Assembly: GCF_032062105.1 (NCBI RefSeq) | Contig: NW_026939963.1 | Span: forward strand, 1-64,000 | Length of the DNA: 64,000 nucleotides | Direction: 5' to 3' | Source: Saccostrea cucullata | Taxonomy: Eukaryota | In this document: piece by piece, positions 1 through 12,493 of the stretch | Position numbering within the stretch: position 1 is the stretch's first letter | How the letters are laid out: every line of letters starts with the position of its first letter | Notes under the pieces: model-generated | What the model saw: the letters and a program-made list of their open reading frames with translations, nothing else | The model's database searches: none | What the model was told of the DNA's origin: nothing | Position numbers and translations under genes: made by a program

Positions 1-1440
1 CGTAGCAATTTTTAAACACAGAAAGGAAGGTTCGTGATCAAGTGATTTATTTCGCTGAATTTTTTAATGTTTATAGAGGCTGGGGTGTGATAAAGTTATA
101 ATTTTTTGTGAAGTATATTTTATAGACACATAGTTAAAGAAACGATGGGGGGGGGGGGGTTGGGTTGGGTTGAAGATTTTGTGTTGACCCACTGGAGTTT
201 CCAGAGAGTTCTGAATGTGAAGATGAAGTAGCTTGGCCCTTTGGGTCATCTTTGTCAAGAACTGGTAGGTTAAAAGCCATACACAGAATTTTTTAAAAAA
301 ATAAATAATGTATTTGTTCGTATTTTTTTTAGTGTAAATCCTTGTTTACGGAGTTTTTGCTAGGCGTACATTGCCCTGATTGCGAGCATATAGAATTTAT
401 TTTTAGAGTAGTGAGGTCTTGAAAATAGAGTCTATATCTTTTGCTTGGACGTAAAAAAAATCCTTGTCTTTGTTTAGAACGATCAGATATTGACTCAGGC
501 TTTTCCGTTGGAAAAAAGGGAAAATTTGAAGTTTTACAATTACGTAGTTATCTTTAAAGTGTAATTAAGCTACACAATAAATAAACAAAGTTATTAAATG
601 ATACAACGAAATTTTTATCGTACGGTCTATCTATAGTAGTTTTCACAGTTTTCCCAGAATGCACGACCGTGAAGCCGAGCATGCGTATTCCAGGAGTTTG
701 GACTTACGTAGTTGCTAGCGCTCGAGAGCGCTAGCAATAACACTTTGTGCACATGCGCTGTTGAAAACATATTGTAAACGAACTATTTTCAATAGCGCGG
801 GCTTTCGAAATGTTGAAATTGTTGAAGATTTTCATGTTTCATATCGTTTTCGTCGATGTTATGTTTCTTAGTAGTTATATTCTGTTTTGATTTTTTGCAA
901 ATTAATGGTATAGTGCATTGGAATTTTAAGAATTAACATGCGTAAAGTCGCTTAACAATGTACATGTATCAATGTTTCTACATATAGTTGTCGATAAAAG
1001 CACTTTGTTTAAAACTAAAAGAATGTTCATAAAATATACATGTGCATTATTTTAACTATTCCAAGACTGAATTTTTAAGTTATGAGAAAAAATGCTTATA
1101 GAAAAGAAAACATGCGAAAATTTCTTGGAAACATTACTGGTATTTAACATATAATGTTAACATATAACATATATTGGGATCTGGACTGTTAATTTTAATT
1201 ACTGGTATACGGGATATTGTTTTAAATCATAATCATAGAGACTCTACCTGTTAAAAACAATGACCAAAAGGAAAAAAATAAATATGTACTAACTTCGGAT
1301 CAGACAATATACTCGGGCAATTAAAGTCCGGCTTTCAGTTCTTTCAATACTTTGATTAATTTAGCTATGTGTGTAGAAAGTAAAAATATACTTGACAAAA
1401 AAAATTTAAGACTTTAAATATCAGGAGCCAACCTCGTTAA

Positions 1441-5100: not shown

Positions 5101-8100
5101 ACTCTTCATTTTAATTGTTTATTTCATCATTGTTATAAGTTGGCCGTTTCATACATGATTATCAGTTGGAAGCTGGACATTCTACAGTCCACGCCGACAC
5201 ATAGATCGTGTAGTAAACACCAAGTTTGGAACGTTAATAAAATATTATACGAAGTACCGACTCGTGTATTTCTACCGGTTATAATAGTATCAACACCGTG
5301 CGCAACGTCTAAATGTATGACGTCATACGCGACATTTTAGTGATCGAGAGATGAGAAACTGTATACTTTTAACGATGTTATCAACGACAAATGCGTAAAA
5401 ATTATTATTAAAGTCCTGAAATAAATAAACATGCTTTTAATTACTTTAGTAGTGTAAAATTTATTAAAAGTTGAAGGTATAAATACATGTATTATTTACG
5501 GACTACATTGCGGTTTTACCTGGTGTAATGATTTTAATCAGATTTATTTCCAACTCAAAAAAATAATTCATATTTAAGAGTCTATACTTTGTTTGAATTC
5601 GCGAATCGCCGCGCTTTCTGTAAGCCCCGCCCCTTTTCCCAAACTACGTCACGGATGCTGAGGTTAGACAAACATCTCTTTATAAAGATGGCTGCAAAGA
5701 GGCAAGATCAACACGTTTTTGCAATTTTATCCGACTTACCTCATGACATATCCGAAAATTATATAGAGGGAGAAATTTCCATGAAAGCAAGGCAGCAAGG
5801 CTTTAAGTATTATAGTGAGAATTATTTCGAGAGGGTGAAATTGTATAAAAGCGACAAGGAGAATGAAGTCCGAATTTCCGCAAAATGTCACCGCTCCCAA
5901 CGGAAAAATGACTCTCAGCATTCTTTAAATATAGACGTATCGCCAGGATCCTTGGGTTTGGCGCATTGTTCATGCACAGCTGGGTATGTTTTTGGGTATG
6001 TTTTGTTTTAAAATTTGATGCATATGATTTATCGATACATTGAACATGTTGAATATTCCGATATCTTTGCTGTGAAAATCGTAAAATTAAACCCGACACT
6101 CGTTTTTTTTTCCAGAGCCAGTGGGTCATGTTCTCACATTATTGGCTTGCTGATGGCTCTTCAGCATTGGATTCTGATGGGTTTTAAAGCAGTCCCTGAT
6201 AATCTAACATGTACTAGTATGCCCCAGCAGTGGTCTGTGCCAAGAGGAAGCAAGATTGAAAGTTCTGCTGCTCCCCAAATTTGCATTATTAAACCCCACC
6301 CTGATAGAAAACAGAAACCTGTAGAAAATGTTTTGACAGAATGCAGGTAAGGCCAAAATAAAAAATACTCCTGTTTCCTGTCACCGGACCTACCCTACAT
6401 TTTACCCTTTGACCCTAATAGTTTCTATTACATTTTCATTTTTGGGGTAACTATTTTTCTAAAATACTGAAGTCGGCCAACGATATTTTTTGAATTAATA
6501 CATCACAACTGTACAGGATACCTGTACTTTATAAATCTTGATTAACAAACTTGCTTTGTAAACTGTTAACATATCATTTTCTTGTTATTACATGCTATAT
6601 GAATATGTACTGCATTCATTGAGTTTTGAAAATAAAATTTTTTCCCAAAATGAAATTTCTTCCCTACCTACCGACCCTAATTCTTTTGGTCAGGGGACAG
6701 GAAACAAGAGTATATTTTCTTTTGGTCTTACCAAAAATATCGTTAAAACCTTATAAATTAAATAACATTACTATTAGCAACAATTAAAATTTGTAATTTC
6801 TACATGTATGTATTTATAATCTAATTTTTAAAGTTTCTTGATTAAAATTCATTACCAGGGTACATTGTATTTTTAGGAAGATTTATGTGAATGGAGAAGA
6901 TGTTGACCATTTAAAAGCCTTAAAAGGATTGCCAATCAGTTACTTGGTGTCAAATCCCATGAAGAGGAAAATGACCCATTTGGGTGAAGTTGGAATAGGA
7001 AGTGGTCTAAGCACACATGTATGTTTTGTACTATAATTCAGATTACTTCTCTCTAGCTCTCTCTACTTCTCAGGCAGAACATATATTTTAGTACTATAAT
7101 TAAGTCAATATTTTAATACTTTATCATATGTGATATGCCGGTACATCATGTAATTAAATTTCATCAAATAACAACAATATTGCATGTATGCATATACCGG
7201 TAAACATGAATAAAATACATAATTATACACTACATACTGAGGGTAATGCGTTTAGTCAAGAAAATACCCCATTACATGTATGAAATGCATTTTAACTGGT
7301 TAATATTTATTTTTAAAAAATTAAAAGCTTTGACTTAGGTTTTGTTTTTAATGCAAGGAGGAAAAAAATTTGAAAGCATAGCACAGACATACCATATTTG
7401 GTTAATCAAAGTAAATAAAGAGAGTTTGAATTTTCCAGATAAAATTTTAAAACGTTTGATTCTCTCAATAGCTCTTTCAACGTGAACTCTACGTTTAGCT
7501 ATTTTCTTGGTTAGTAAAGCATCACTCTTGGTCATTTGTTTTCCAATGGTTGCAAAGGGTGGTATGTTTAATTGCAGCCCACATTTCTCTACTTCCTCTT
7601 CGATGTTAAATCCTTTATCTGCCATGAGTCCATATCCTTGGAGTAGGTAATCCTCATCCAACAAGTCTTTGAGCATGTCTTCAAACTTTGATCGCACAAA
7701 AATATCCTTGTCAGATATACCGCCACTAAATAACATGGAAGCAAATGTAACTGAACCCCTTGGATCACACACTACTAAACCTTTCGTAGTATTGCAGCTT
7801 TTATAGTCACTGTAGGTTTGTGATTGGGCCTTAAGAGATGATGGTTTGTTGATTTTTATTTCTGTGCAGTCAAGAATACCAAAAGTTGTCGGAAATTCTT
7901 CTTTAAATTTGGGTGGCATATTTTCTTTGATGACATTTCTGTGAGGCCAGATGGAAAGCTCTCCAAATCTCAAAAACATGTAATTGATCCAGTGCGTAAA
8001 AATAACACTTGTTGTCTGTTTACTAATTTTAAATCGAAAAGCCAAGTCAGAATAATGAAAATCATGTCTCAATTTCATAATTGTTAAAAATAATTGACTT

Positions 8101-11100
8101 TTCAAATTCAATGCCATGACTTCTTTTGATCTGTTTGATGGAAACTGTATTGGTATAACTTGATCATTTGGTACCAAAAAAATATATACTCCAAGAAACT
8201 GATCAGGTGTTAAACCTGTGTAATATTTGAATTGTTTTGCATCACCAATGATGACATCAACATTAAATTCCTGTGAAAGTTCAGCTTGCAATTTTACATT
8301 TTTTTTTCTGTGTAAGTCTTCTTATAAAGTTGATCATATGCTCCATATACAGTCTGAAGTTTACCATTTAAGCTTCTATTTTCCTCCAAAATGTTCTTGT
8401 TTTCAGCAGCCAGTAGTAAAACATCCATAGGTTCAACCCCTGGAATAAATTGCAAATAAAATGTATTTACATGTATTAGTTTTTCATAATGCAATGCAGC
8501 ATTTTCATTTATTTTTTTTTTACAGGCATCCTTCTATGAGCCACAAGTACAAAAGGCAGTGGATACAAAATGTGGAGATCTAAAATTGCCCTATATCTGT
8601 CCAGTTTTACTACCAGATAAATATAAACATTTATCAGAATCTCTAGCAATAGACTTGAACAAAGCTCATGAAATTCAAGAGGAAACACAAGAACAATATC
8701 ATTCACAGAGATGGCATTTAGAGAGAAAAACACGACTCACAGCGTCCAAATTTTACGAAATTTTACACAGGAAAACTATTTCTTTGAAGTATGTCAAAAG
8801 TATTTTAGAACCAAAAGCATTTAAGTCTACTTCCACGTCATAAATTTCCAATGAAAAGAAAGCCAGAGAGATGTATGTTAAAAGACAGGGATTGCATGTA
8901 CATGACTGCGGACTGTGCATTAATCCAGAATTGCCATTTCTAGGGGCAACTCCAGATGGAATTGTCTGTGATGGAGGTGTAAGTGGAATTGTTGAAATTA
9001 AGTGCCCCTACTCTGCTCGAGACTTGACCATTCAAGATTCTCTTTCCCTTCCCAACTTTTGTTTACTTGAAACTGATGGAAAAATTACTTTAAAAAAATC
9101 TCACGCCTTCTATTTCCAAGTTCAAGGACAACTTCTGGTCACCGGTGTTTCTTTTTGTGATTTCATTGTATTTACTCGAAAAGAATTACATGTCGAAAGA
9201 ATATATCCTAATGTTCATTTTATGAAAGAACTTGTCTCAAATTTAACTGAAATATACTTCTGTCATTTTCATGATTTTATTGAATAAACTGTTGTCTGCA
9301 TCTATGTTGGGTAATGTTCATAAATCAAACTGGCATCATGCACTTACATTTTTCCTCAGTTTGAGAGCAAGTTGACACACCAGTGGCAGTAACATGCTGA
9401 GAAGATTCTTCACATTGATTATCAGGGTCTTCCTGATTTTCTGATTCACTGAAATTACAGAACAAAGGTCACTGCAAAATTGATCTACCAACAAAATGTT
9501 TCACATCTATATATCAACACAAAACTATAGGCATTGCTCTATAAAAGACCAGGAGGCAATAAACTACAAGTGAAATATAAAAGTTACAATTTAAAAAAAA
9601 AGCAGTTTTTTTTATTTTAATTTTTTTTTCTTTATAAAATGTGCATGGAAATAATATATACTAATGATTTAATTTTACCTTGACTGTTTGCTGAAGATTC
9701 CCCTGTTCTTTGGAGGGGGTCTAGATGGCTTGGGTGTGCTGGAAGTCAGAGGAATGGGGTCAGGATATGTTGGTGTAGGACCACAGCCATTCATAAAGTG
9801 CTGCAATCAAATATAGCATGAATCTTAACCATGTTACCAAACAATTTTTCAGATAAACACATAGGCCTATTCTCAATTATTCTTTAGAAGTTCAAAGATA
9901 TACGTATAATCAGGGATCTACCAAATAGGTACTGAAAAAATTACTAAAGTGAAATCATATGCAAAATTTTCACTTCTCGAGGATTATGATGTGAAATGCA
10001 TGTTAACCTCTTTAATACACTATAAAACACATTTTATTCAGGCAGTAGCCCCGGCATTTGCGATATATTTTAAAATAATTGGGGACATGACAGACGATGT
10101 TCAAAAACAACAAAGGAAATTCTGGCTGATTTTGCTAACAATAAACGTAACTTCTGTTTAAATTCGCAAAATCATTTATAAGAGCGTAAATTTGTATGCT
10201 ACGATCAATATTAACAACATAATTGAACATACCTTGGAGCAGACATAAGTGTTTTTTGTTATCCTGTCGACGTTGAGTTGTTTGTGGGGGCGATTACACG
10301 CCTTGATCCACCGTCGGCATTTGTCAATATCTGTTTTAGGTTTAGGGAATGGGTAAAATATCACCCCCTTATTCCGGGCCGGATACCGACTGTCACTGTT
10401 GCAAAGTCCGAATGCACATCTTTTAACCATAACAATCGTATGAATGTGTTGACCTACTGTACAGTAGTAGTTTTGTTTGTCTAACCTTCCGCCACGCAAC
10501 TTTTGGTGACGCTTTCTCTACGTCATACCTTTTATCTGATTGGTCAGGTCAGTTATCCCGGGAAAATTGGCGATTCGCGAATTGTCTTTAATAAGATGAA
10601 AAATAAAACGATTGAAAAGCACAATAGAATTTATAGGGAGATTTGTAGGGTTTTTATGACAGTTCAATATAAAGATTATAGAAGTAAGGGTGTACAGTAA
10701 AGACTTTTCAACAACAGCTATTACCCCGGTTCCCCCGGATTACCGTGTAGAAAAATACACATTTATGTATATACGAGTATGTATCGATAGTCACTTTTTA
10801 GGTCCATAACTTGACGCATGTTTTATCATACAGTGTATTTAGGTGAAATACTTCAAAATAGTAATAAAATAGTAATTATAAGAAGTATTGCAATAGCAAA
10901 ATAACTTCAAATGGTTCTCAAACTAAACCTTCAATACGACTTCCAAAGAACTTTATAAGTAATAATTTTTACTTTAGTGTTCGGATTTTACTTTGATTCA
11001 GTGCAAAACATTTAAAGACATATATATGTGGCATATTTTTGATAATTTCAGTTAATTAGAATTAAGAAAACATTTCTATTTGTAACTTTATATGACTCTG

Positions 11101-12050
11101 CATATTACACAATTTAAACAATTGCGCCATGCGTTTCAAACATATAAAAAATTTGAAACAATATTCGATATATTTACCGACTCCACAAAAAAAAAAAGAC
11201 ATAAGGTCATGTTAACTATAAAACGTGAGGTTATAATTATTCAATTATTCATGCTCAAAATCTTGTGAAAATTTTTATTTGAACGCAAATAAGTGAAATA
11301 ACTATATCTACATCTAATTTCGTATTATTATTTTATAGCTCACATTCAACAAATTAAGTTTAAGGTTCGTAAGTCTGTAACAGATTTTTGGCAAAAGATT
11401 TAAAATGATAAAATTTCCTTTCAATATTTTTTTTCAGATTTTCAGACGAGAATACATTTAGGATTTAACGCCGTTTATCTACGAGAATGGCTGTCAGTAT
11501 TTCCACGTGATCAGATGTTAATTCTACGTACAGAAGACTACTCATCTAACGTGTCCTCTGTTGTCAGAAAAGTATTCAAATTTCTGGAATTACGTAAGTA
11601 TTATAATTTTAAAGTGTCTGTAATGCATTTTTTCTTTCAATACCAGAAATATTTTCAACATTGAATTTGTCATCATCATTTGCCCTTCATATTTTGGTAT
11701 AAAAATATATTGATCATAACAATAATTTTACATGTCTTTTAAGTATTTTAGAGGTTTTTATAATTATTTTATATGTTATTTTTTCAGGTGATATGACTGA
11801 TGATGAATTAGAAAAACTGAATATTACGATATCAGAAAGAGTTTATGTTACCAAAGACAAGATTGGAAAACCGCCCATGTACCCCAAAACAAGACAAATA
11901 TTAGAAAATCTTTATCGTTCTGATATACAAGACTTATACAAAATATTGAACGATGAAAGATTTCTATGGCGATCACAAAGCAGTGTTATTGTTAATAATA
12001 ATGAAAATGTAACACAATTTTATAAAGTATATTATGAAAATAAAACATGA
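2170..12050 (+). CDS. CHST15/GalNAc4S-6ST-like carbohydrate sulfotransferase, spliced, 5'-incomplete; exons 2170-2371, 2740-2865, 3219-3375, 3777-3948, 11446-11593, 11788-12050
   Basis: Hand-spliced GT-AG exons keep phase and give KNPCW..CLPYFQVIGMDKCGTTDLF (5'-PSB), KENMWWSWKRYG, GDGTPMDMWD..LIVILRNPVDRLYSDYYF (3'-PB), RIHLGFNAVYLREWLSVFPRDQMLILRTEDY, closely paralleling CHST15 motifs. N-terminal/TM exon not identified. Confidence 0.85.
3555..3743. mobile_element. MITE, Kolobok-like (TTAA-type target), in sulfotransferase intron
   Basis: 20 bp TIR AGGTGCATAGACACAGATTT / AAATCTGTGTCTATGCACCT; flanks TGAA / TTAA. Confidence 0.75.
5688..9287 (+). pseudogene. SWIM zinc finger + YqaJ/lambda-exonuclease-like protein; exons 5688-5983, 6116-6346, 6877-7018, 8526-9287; in-frame stop at 8841-8843
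   Basis: Spliced SWIM motif HCSCTAGASGSCSH; TCTSMPQQW; YqaJ motifs WHLERKTRLTASKF, LGATPDG, IVEIKCP, YFQVQGQL; GT-AG phases consistent. Confidence 0.85.
6351..6727. mobile_element. PIF/Harbinger-type MITE in intron 2 of the YqaJ gene
   Basis: ~32 bp TIR GGCCAAAATAAAAAATACTCCTGTTTCCTGTC vs GACAGGAAACAAGAGTATATTTTCTTTTGGTC; flanks TAA/TTA. Confidence 0.75.
7335..10430 (-). pseudogene. THAP + HTH + DDE_Tnp_4 (Harbinger/ISL2EU) transposase; exons 10430-10233, 9800-9679, 9448-9348, 8439-7335; one frameshift near 8295-8330
   Basis: THAP CAFGLC..FPKPK..W..VCSK|HF joined across a phase-0 intron; HTH LFLTIMKLR..DLAFRFKIS; DDE motifs LDCTE, YSDYK, MADKGF, RVHVERAIERIK. Confidence 0.88.
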
Positions 12051-12493
12051 TGCCTAATCTCTCTGAGAGTTTAATGGTCGTATTGAAATGAATATCATAA
12101 TAAAAATAGATTTTTCATGATATTTTACAAATGATTTAGTATCTGTCTGCAAAGAATCACAATACATGCTACATTTTGAAGAGTGCTTTTTAGCAAATCT
12201 TTCCAACTCGACGGACAAGTATCATTCAAAAGTCTACCAATCCATGTAACTTTCAGACTTTTATGAAAAGAATAAAGATATACAGCAGTATTCTGAAACC
12301 TTACTATTCATAACTCTGAAAAATATCCTTATTTGCTACTGTTGGGGTTTTATAAATCCAGATATAATCATAAAAGAAATTCCTTTATCTCTTCCCTGGG
12401 AAAGTTTGGAAGACTAATTGGTTGATATGTTTATTGTCTTCGTACTCATTGCGAGGTGGACTTTGAGCTGTGATCTATATATACCTACCAATT

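What the first reader, a model, noticed from the sequence alone, without database searches (positions are those of the whole stretch)
5599..10580. Transposon whose two genes are mutually nested: each terminal exon sits inside an intron of the other gene
Seen: the SWIM-YqaJ gene (+, ATG 5688) has intron 7019-8525, which holds the whole DDE exon (8439-7335) of the transposase. The transposase gene (-, ATG 10430) has intron 9347-8440, which holds the whole nuclease exon (8526-9287). All six junctions are GT-AG and phase-consistent, and no coding bases overlap. The two last 3' splice sites lie back to back in an 86 bp spacer (8440-8525). Known: ISL2EU elements encode a THAP-DDE transposase and a YqaJ nuclease. 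Inference: the pre-mRNAs must overlap antisense over ~2 kb (7335-9287) while the mature mRNAs barely do. This interlock could impose transcriptional collision or mutual exclusion, link splicing to escape from dsRNA silencing, and keep the two catalytic domains from being separated by simple deletion. I do not know of this layout being described, but cannot check.
Basis: partly seen in the sequence, partly recalled or inferred. Interest (0 to 1): 0.8.

Follow-up and report, generated by a model that had tools for sequence, protein, structure and literature searches.

The report
Transposon with two interleaved genes
This is a decayed copy of a known kind of cut-and-paste transposon (ISL2EU) whose two genes are interleaved, each one's last exon lying inside the other's last intron; the same layout recurs in bivalves, an acorn worm and a fish, arose once, and is not mentioned in the papers I could search.

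Summary
The layout is real. Window 5599-10580 is one ISL2EU element with 12-bp inverted ends and an AT target duplication.

The nuclease exon has an in-frame TAA at 8841-8843. The two halves of the DDE exon are out of frame at a 9-A run (8299-8307). A 380-bp MITE sits in intron 2.

The interleaving is not a one-off:
- Two other full copies and a second family in this genome have the same order.
- So do loci from Argopecten, Dreissena, the hemichordate Glandiceps and a cyprinid fish, plus several metagenome contigs.
- Intron positions and phases match, and public gene models of scallop and zebra mussel splice the same way.

More distant relatives (a tick and 45 metagenome contigs) have two plain convergent genes. 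On a transposase tree of 80 rows, all interleaved loci form one clade (support 99), so the layout changed once.

Two short public contigs look like spliced transcripts, but their run type is unknown.

The ISL2EU papers I read speak only of "two ORFs".

An earlier scan note covers the nuclease gene on this same stretch.

The parts
5597..5598 (.). left target-site duplication AT (preceded by A)
   Evidence: every copy in this genome shows aAT|TCGCGA... with a different flank
5599..5610 (+). left terminal inverted repeat TCGCGAATCGCC
5688..5983 (+). nuclease gene exon 1, ending in the CxC half of a SWIM-like motif
   Evidence: homologous to the N-terminus of Argopecten protein P0271 and to intronless relatives
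6116..6346 (+). nuclease gene exon 2, carrying the CxH half of the motif and the conserved CTSxPQxWxxPR block
6350..6730 (.). MITE-like insertion in nuclease intron 2, with ~43-bp inverted ends at 6346-6390 and 6688-6732
   Evidence: dozens of solo copies at ~90% identity; absent from L002 and L003
6877..7018 (+). nuclease gene exon 3, ending ...GSGLSTH at a phase-0 donor
   Evidence: the Argopecten model has the same junction STH|A
7019..8525 (+). nuclease gene intron 3, which holds the whole DDE exon of the transposase gene
7335..8439 (-). transposase exon 4 (HTH_Tnp_4 + DDE_Tnp_4), broken by a frame change at the A-run 8299-8307
   Evidence: the same exon is one open frame of 364-375 codons in L032, L033 and L130
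8440..8525 (.). 86-bp spacer with the two last acceptor sites back to back, each with its pyrimidine tract
   Evidence: the spacer is 74 bp in Argopecten and at most ~50-240 bp in the other interleaved loci
8526..9287 (+). nuclease gene exon 4 (YqaJ / alkaline exonuclease domain), with no start codon of its own and an in-frame TAA at 8841-8843
8440..9347 (-). transposase intron 3, which holds the whole nuclease exon 4
   Evidence: the last intron hosts the nuclease exon in Argopecten, Dreissena, Glandiceps and Sinocyclocheilus models too
9348..9448 (-). transposase exon 3 (acidic linker)
   Evidence: joined to the DDE exon in Saccostrea echinata model P0001
9679..9800 (-). transposase exon 2, starting HF, the end of the THAP signature
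10233..10430 (-). transposase exon 1 (THAP zinc finger)
   Evidence: PF05485, E 5e-7
10569..10580 (-). right terminal inverted repeat
10581..10582 (.). right target-site duplication AT (followed by T)

Best explanation
Window 5599-10580 is a dead copy of an ISL2EU cut-and-paste transposon. It belongs to a clade in which the two element genes are interleaved.

The THAP-HTH-DDE transposase gene reads inward from the right end. The nuclease gene (SWIM-like N-terminal domain plus YqaJ domain) reads inward from the left end. Each gene's long catalytic last exon lies, on the opposite strand, inside the last intron of the other. Making either mRNA therefore requires transcribing through the partner's catalytic exon in antisense and splicing it out.

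Shown here: the exon order, the junctions, their conservation, and a single change of layout on the transposase tree.

Inferred: the layout arose once from the plain convergent arrangement kept by more distant ISL2EU lineages, by an exchange of the two adjacent 3' segments. It has persisted because undoing it would need a multi-breakpoint rearrangement that spares both genes. This is a structural lock-in, not a demonstrated regulatory device.

This particular copy cannot make either protein.
For: Element identity: Pfam domains; TIR and AT duplication in all copies; fit to the published ISL2EU definition.

One nuclease protein from exons 1-4:
- Exon 4 has no start codon, and homology starts right at the acceptor.
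- Relatives with an uninterrupted ORF carry the same N-terminal blocks followed by YqaJ. These are the DNA metagenome scaffold L037 and contigs L036 and L035.
- Argopecten RefSeq proteins P0271 and P0272 map exon by exon, with the same STH|A junction.

One transposase from the four - strand exons:
- Annotated THAP+DDE proteins exist in Argopecten, Dreissena, Glandiceps, Sinanodonta and fishes.
- Their last intron contains the nuclease exon, and the acceptor phase is the same: AG followed by 2 nt of a split codon in the oyster window, the scallop and the acorn worm.
- In the tick, the DDE region and the C-terminal part of the THAP domain lie in one ORF.

Conservation: the same order is seen in L002 and L003, in a second family in this genome (L130), in L031-L034 and in metagenome contigs L045, L048-L050 and L112.

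Single change: in the DDE tree of 80 rows, the 9 definite interleaved loci sit in one clade with no convergent locus (SH-aLRT 99). There is 1 change between the 9 interleaved and 41 convergent rows. Its sister is the convergent L054.

Possible transcripts: Logan contigs L132 (the whole nuclease CDS contiguous on 1743 nt, closest to interleaved-type nucleases) and L125 (transposase exons 2-3-4 contiguous, nested in the interleaved clade).
Against: There are no RNA reads from this genome, so the junctions are not demonstrated here.

The RefSeq models may rest partly on protein homology.

L125 and L132 come from runs of unknown library type. They could be genomic copies that lost introns.

The tree is unrooted, so 'derived from convergent' rests on midpoint rooting and on the greater depth of the convergent lineages.

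Every copy of this particular family that I examined is damaged.

The neutral lock-in reading is an inference. Nothing here excludes a selected function.
Confidence: 0.8

Rival explanations
1. The interleaving is a selected regulatory device. Convergent transcription across both catalytic exons would make the two genes mutually exclusive per copy, or would feed dsRNA or small-RNA self-limitation, with splicing as the escape.
For: The layout has been kept across a clade spanning molluscs, a hemichordate and teleosts. The close back-to-back placement of the two acceptors is conserved too, at roughly 50-240 bp or less. The gene ends are tight: in Argopecten the nuclease stop lies 18 bp from the neighbouring transposase exon.
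Against: There are no expression or small-RNA data. Many ISL2EU lineages do without the layout (45 convergent loci). Persistence is equally expected from a rearrangement that is hard to reverse.
Confidence: 0.15
2. The interleaved layout is ancestral for ISL2EU, and the plain convergent layout is the derived one.
For: The tree is unrooted. One change separates the two states, so either direction needs one event.
Against: The interleaved clade is small and shallow. It is nested among many deep convergent lineages under midpoint rooting, with a convergent sister, L054. Several convergent-type genes are single ORFs or have few introns.
Confidence: 0.15
3. There is no splicing across the partner. 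The four blocks would be separate genes: a THAP protein, a stand-alone DDE transposase starting at the Met at 8428, a stand-alone YqaJ protein, and a SWIM-like protein.
For: The DDE exon has an in-frame ATG 4 codons after its acceptor. Many database models are DDE-only proteins of about 360-400 aa.
Against: The YqaJ exon has no start codon. Conservation runs right up to both acceptors. Intronless relatives have the N-terminal domain and YqaJ in one ORF, and the tick has the DDE region and the end of the THAP domain in one ORF. Junction positions and phases are conserved across phyla.
Confidence: 0.04
4. It is a one-off rearrangement or an assembly artefact of this copy.
For: None was found.
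Against: Other copies, a second family and other phyla show the same order.
Confidence: 0.01

Closest known systems
ISL2EU transposons (Repbase superfamily; a group of the PHIS / Harbinger-like superfamily), for example the Crassostrea gigas families ISL2EU-8, -10, -11 and -15_CGi listed in Table S2 of PMC4482050
   Same: AT duplication in an A|AT|T target, short TIRs and a size near 4.8-5.4 kb. One gene encodes THAP-HTH-DDE_Tnp_4 (about 530 aa) and the other a YqaJ protein (about 480-540 aa).
   Different: Nothing in membership differs. The papers describe 'two ORFs' and say nothing on their arrangement. The TIR starts TC, not the 'usually GG' reported there.
Convergent-type ISL2EU elements (tick Ornithodoros turicata locus L044, JGI contig L036, 45 metagenome contigs)
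   Same: The same two proteins, including the SWIM-like N-terminal domain of the nuclease. DDE identity to the window is 33-45%.
   Different: The genes lie tail to tail without overlap. The nuclease gene has few or no introns, and in the tick most of the transposase is one ORF. These loci fall outside the interleaved clade.
PIF/Harbinger elements (transposase plus Myb-like protein)
   Same: Related DDE_Tnp_4 transposase, and two genes both needed for transposition (as stated in PMC9179366).
   Different: The second gene is a Myb/SANT DNA-binding protein, not a nuclease. The target duplication is 3 bp. No interleaving is reported in the papers read.
Interleaved or nested host gene pairs of animal genomes
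   Same: Exons of one gene lie in introns of a gene on the other strand. From my own memory, the Drosophila genome annotation has an 'interleaved' class. PMC8493703 reports exon and intron sharing in opposite directions between human Pou5f1 and Tcf19 (title and abstract only).
   Different: Those are pairs of unrelated host genes at fixed loci. Here the pair is the complete coding content of a mobile element and travels with it between genomes.

Membership tests
ISL2EU | DDE transposase of the DDE_Tnp_4 type with HTH_Tnp_4 | tested here: met
   PF13359 E 1.7e-42 over the full profile; PF13613 E 2.4e-13
ISL2EU | THAP domain at the N-terminus of the transposase | tested here: met
   THAP exon on the same strand. 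It is joined to the DDE exon in the annotated proteins of relatives.
ISL2EU | second gene with a YqaJ exonuclease domain | tested here: met
   PF09588 E 3.5e-12 and PF01771 E 1.7e-4
ISL2EU | 2-bp AT target-site duplication in an A|AT|T target | tested here: met
   the ends of ten copy termini read aAT|TCGCGA... or ...TCGCGA|ATt with unrelated flanks
ISL2EU | terminal inverted repeats (6-259 bp, 'usually' starting GG) | tested here: met
   A 12-bp perfect TIR. It starts TC rather than GG, but GG is a tendency, not a rule.
Interleaved (mutually nested) gene pair | each gene has an exon inside an intron of the other, on the opposite strand | tested here: met
   At the level of sequence, homology and conserved junctions.
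Interleaved (mutually nested) gene pair | both spliced mRNAs are actually made | not testable with these tools
Contigs L125 and L132 are suggestive only.
SWIM zinc finger (N-terminal domain of the nuclease) | CxCxnCxH signature recognised by the family model | tested here: inconclusive
   The motif spans the exon 1/2 junction and is conserved in relatives. Pfam SWIM matches 2 of 16 relatives, best E 0.0007, and P0247 at 18.4 bits against a cutoff of 19.6. UniProt names relatives 'SWIM-type domain-containing'.

The most novel reading that the evidence does not exclude
The interleaved layout is a selected self-regulating circuit. Each copy can complete only one of the two convergent transcripts at a time, or the overlapping pre-mRNAs seed small RNAs. 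Either would set the transposase:nuclease ratio or limit the element's own activity. That would explain why one ISL2EU clade carrying the layout spread through several animal phyla.
Probability: 0.15. Interest if true: 0.8.

Novelty: new variant of a known kind. Interest (0 to 1): 0.55.

Why it matters
The transposon kind is known, but ISL2EU turns out to have two gene layouts. One of them is a compact, mutually nested gene pair that has been kept in a clade found in molluscs, a hemichordate and fishes.

- It gives a clear structural character for subdividing ISL2EU and for tracing its spread between hosts.
- It explains why ORF-based transposon annotation sees four disconnected pieces.
- It offers a small, portable natural system for studying convergent transcription and splicing across an antisense coding exon.
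- It bears on how the still unexplained YqaJ nuclease is co-expressed with the transposase.

Tried and rejected

Joined spliced models: I never built or searched one. Every search used single exons by reference or database proteins.

Hunt for spliced contigs of the close family: Logan contigs L038-L043 and protein P0274 are unspliced, genomic-type sequence.

Programmed frameshift or transcriptional slippage at the A-run 8299-8307: rejected. Copies differ in run length (8, 9 or 10 A plus CC). None of the family copies aligned there has an open frame across the site. Relatives have one open frame.

Other steps that led nowhere:
- The sigma-70 and terminator scan is meaningless for an animal genome.
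- AATAAA sits at both gene ends (9283-9288 on +, 7306-7311 on -), but the hexamer is no commoner than in shuffled sequence (209 observed against 193 expected), so I give it no weight.
- L078 and L089 show N-terminal exons after the DDE with no YqaJ. They could not be classed and were left as unknown.
- The nuclease tree supports the clade only weakly: 2 changes, with a long-branch intruder.
Full report
**1. What is at 5599-10580**

The stretch is one transposon. It has 12-bp perfect inverted ends (TCGCGAATCGCC). These are flanked by AT on both sides, within A-AT...AT-T. Ten termini of other copies in this genome show the same ends next to unrelated flanks. This matches the ISL2EU target A|AT|T and the 2-bp AT duplication described in PMC4482050.

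Pfam finds these domains:
- THAP in 10430..10233 (-).
- HTH_Tnp_4 and DDE_Tnp_4 in 8291..7338 (-).
- YqaJ / viral alkaline exonuclease in 8526-9284 (+).

The closest database protein is a Saccostrea echinata model at 92% identity. The host is therefore an oyster-like bivalve.

**2.

All six introns are GT...AG, and each junction keeps the frame that carries homology. The order along the + strand is:
- nuclease exons 1-3 (+);
- the DDE exon (-);
- an 86-bp spacer;
- the YqaJ exon (+);
- transposase exons 3, 2 and 1 (-).

- The YqaJ exon has an in-frame TAA at 8841-8843. It was made by a 3-nt deletion private to this copy.
- The DDE exon is in two frames, with the break at a 9-A run at 8299-8307. 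Copies L002 and L003 share this state, other copies have other run lengths, and none of the copies aligned there is open across the site.
- A 380-bp MITE-like element sits in intron 2.

L002 and L003 carry further lesions of their own. This family looks dead or non-autonomous here.

**3. Are these really two spliced genes?**

The case is therefore comparative. I searched exon by exon and never joined exons.

For the nuclease gene:
- Exon 4 has no start codon, and homology begins right at its acceptor.
- 22 of the 150 best YqaJ relatives carry exon 1-3-like sequence N-terminal to YqaJ, in the same order.
- Some of these relatives are uninterrupted ORFs on short contigs. One is a Tara DNA metagenome scaffold (L037); others are L035 and L036.
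- The conserved blocks are CxCx7-9CxH, CTSxPQxWxxPR and GSxLSYQL. They lie in exons 1/2, 2 and 3 respectively.
- Argopecten RefSeq proteins P0271 (478 aa) and P0272 map onto locus L031 with the same phase-0 junction...STH|A....

For the transposase gene:
- Annotated THAP+HTH+DDE proteins of about 500-535 aa exist in Argopecten, Dreissena, Glandiceps, Sinanodonta and fishes.
- Mapped on their loci, the last intron of each contains the YqaJ exon on the other strand.
- The last acceptor has the same phase (AG plus 2 nt of a split codon) in the oyster window, the scallop and the acorn worm.
- The Saccostrea echinata model joins exon 2, exon 3 and the DDE exon.

**4. How widespread is the layout?**

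The same order occurs in:
- the other full copies;
- a second, 56%-identical family in this genome (L130), where the DDE frame is open and the YqaJ exon matches as one uninterrupted stretch;
- Argopecten L031, Dreissena L032, the hemichordate Glandiceps L033 and, as a remnant, the cyprinid Sinocyclocheilus L034;
- metagenome contigs L045, L048-L050 and L112.

In Dreissena the public annotation itself shows two overlapping genes. They are a 511-aa THAP-DDE gene at 8001-12611 (+) and a 492-aa YqaJ gene at 10540-14307 (-).

The gap between the heads of the two catalytic exons is short everywhere, at most about 50-240 bp.

**5. Relatives without the layout**

The tick Ornithodoros turicata (L044) has the nuclease gene at 8001-9745 (+). 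Its transposase ORF of 484 aa, which holds the C-terminal part of the THAP domain through the DDE region, lies at 12254..10800 (-). The two genes are plainly convergent.

JGI contig L036 and 45 metagenome contigs are also convergent.

I built a maximum-likelihood tree of 80 DDE sequences. The 9 definite interleaved loci, 2 probable ones, one unclassed contig and L125 form one clade with SH-aLRT 99. The convergent L054 is its sister. Interleaved versus convergent needs exactly one change.

The nuclease tree agrees only weakly.

The tree is unrooted. With midpoint rooting, and given the much greater depth of the convergent lineages, interleaving is most simply a derived state that arose once. 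A swap of the two adjacent 3' segments would produce it, with breakpoints in two introns and in the space between the gene ends. That step is inference only.

**6. Possible transcripts**

L132 is a Logan contig from SRR23477407, 1743 nt long. It carries the whole 485-aa nuclease CDS without interruption. That protein is 40-52% identical to interleaved-type nucleases and about 30% identical to convergent-type ones. It maps onto interleaved loci with the same four exon blocks.

L125 is a Logan contig from SRR27896760. It falls inside the interleaved clade. Its equivalents of transposase exons 2-3-4 are contiguous, and they are preceded by an acceptor and 1.3 kb of intron-like sequence.

Both contigs are what spliced or partly spliced RNAs would look like. 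The library types are unknown, so intron-less genomic copies are not excluded.

**7. Prior knowledge**

The three papers that treat ISL2EU in any depth describe 'two ORFs' (THAP-HTH-DDE and YqaJ) without any word on arrangement. These are PMC4482050, PMC4122938 and PMC9179366. The other papers in the library that mention ISL2EU together with THAP or exonuclease add nothing.

Table S2 of PMC4482050 lists oyster families with multi-exon ORFs of about 534 and 477 aa. The interleaved exon coordinates are therefore probably implicit in Repbase, and they are explicit in RefSeq gene models. What appears to be unreported is:
- the layout as such;
- its conservation;
- its single origin;
- the existence of two ISL2EU layouts.

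That agrees with my reading.

**8. Verdict**

The structural interpretation is supported and extended. The functional ideas are untested.

I score it as a new variant of a known kind, with moderate interest.

Noticed in passing
window 6346-6732: A ~380-bp MITE-like element with ~43-bp inverted ends is inserted in intron 2 of the nuclease gene. Dozens of solo copies at about 90% identity lie elsewhere in the genome.
   Followed up: partly
G000, many contigs: The genome holds more than 100 loci with ISL2EU/PHIS-type DDE domains at 32-56% identity to this one. Many have open frames of 360-425 codons, so several other families may still be intact. Only one (L130 = C4574:2581-6399) could be checked, and it is interleaved too.
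   Followed up: partly
L005 / L025 (G000:C6672:176075-181043): This is an internal-deletion derivative of the same family. It lacks the YqaJ exon together with transposase exons 2 and 3, while keeping the THAP exon, the DDE exon and nuclease exons 1-3.
   Followed up: no
P0122 / P0275 (Syngnathoides biaculeatus): RefSeq models named 'syntaxin-binding protein 1b isoform X4 / X1' fuse a Sec1-family part to an ISL2EU nuclease (exon 1-4 homologues). This is either exon capture by a host gene or an annotation chimera.
   Followed up: no
L125 (SRR27896760) and L132 (SRR23477407): These short public contigs hold interleaved-clade genes without the host intron. They are candidate spliced transcripts, but the run types are unknown.
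   Followed up: partly
L006-L009, L014, L016, L021 (G000:C16820 and C22951): Two contigs carry near-identical, more diverged copies (82-95%) of the element. Each has extra DNA of about 1 kb and 2.8 kb inserted inside the YqaJ and DDE exons. They may be haplotigs or a segmental duplication.
   Followed up: no
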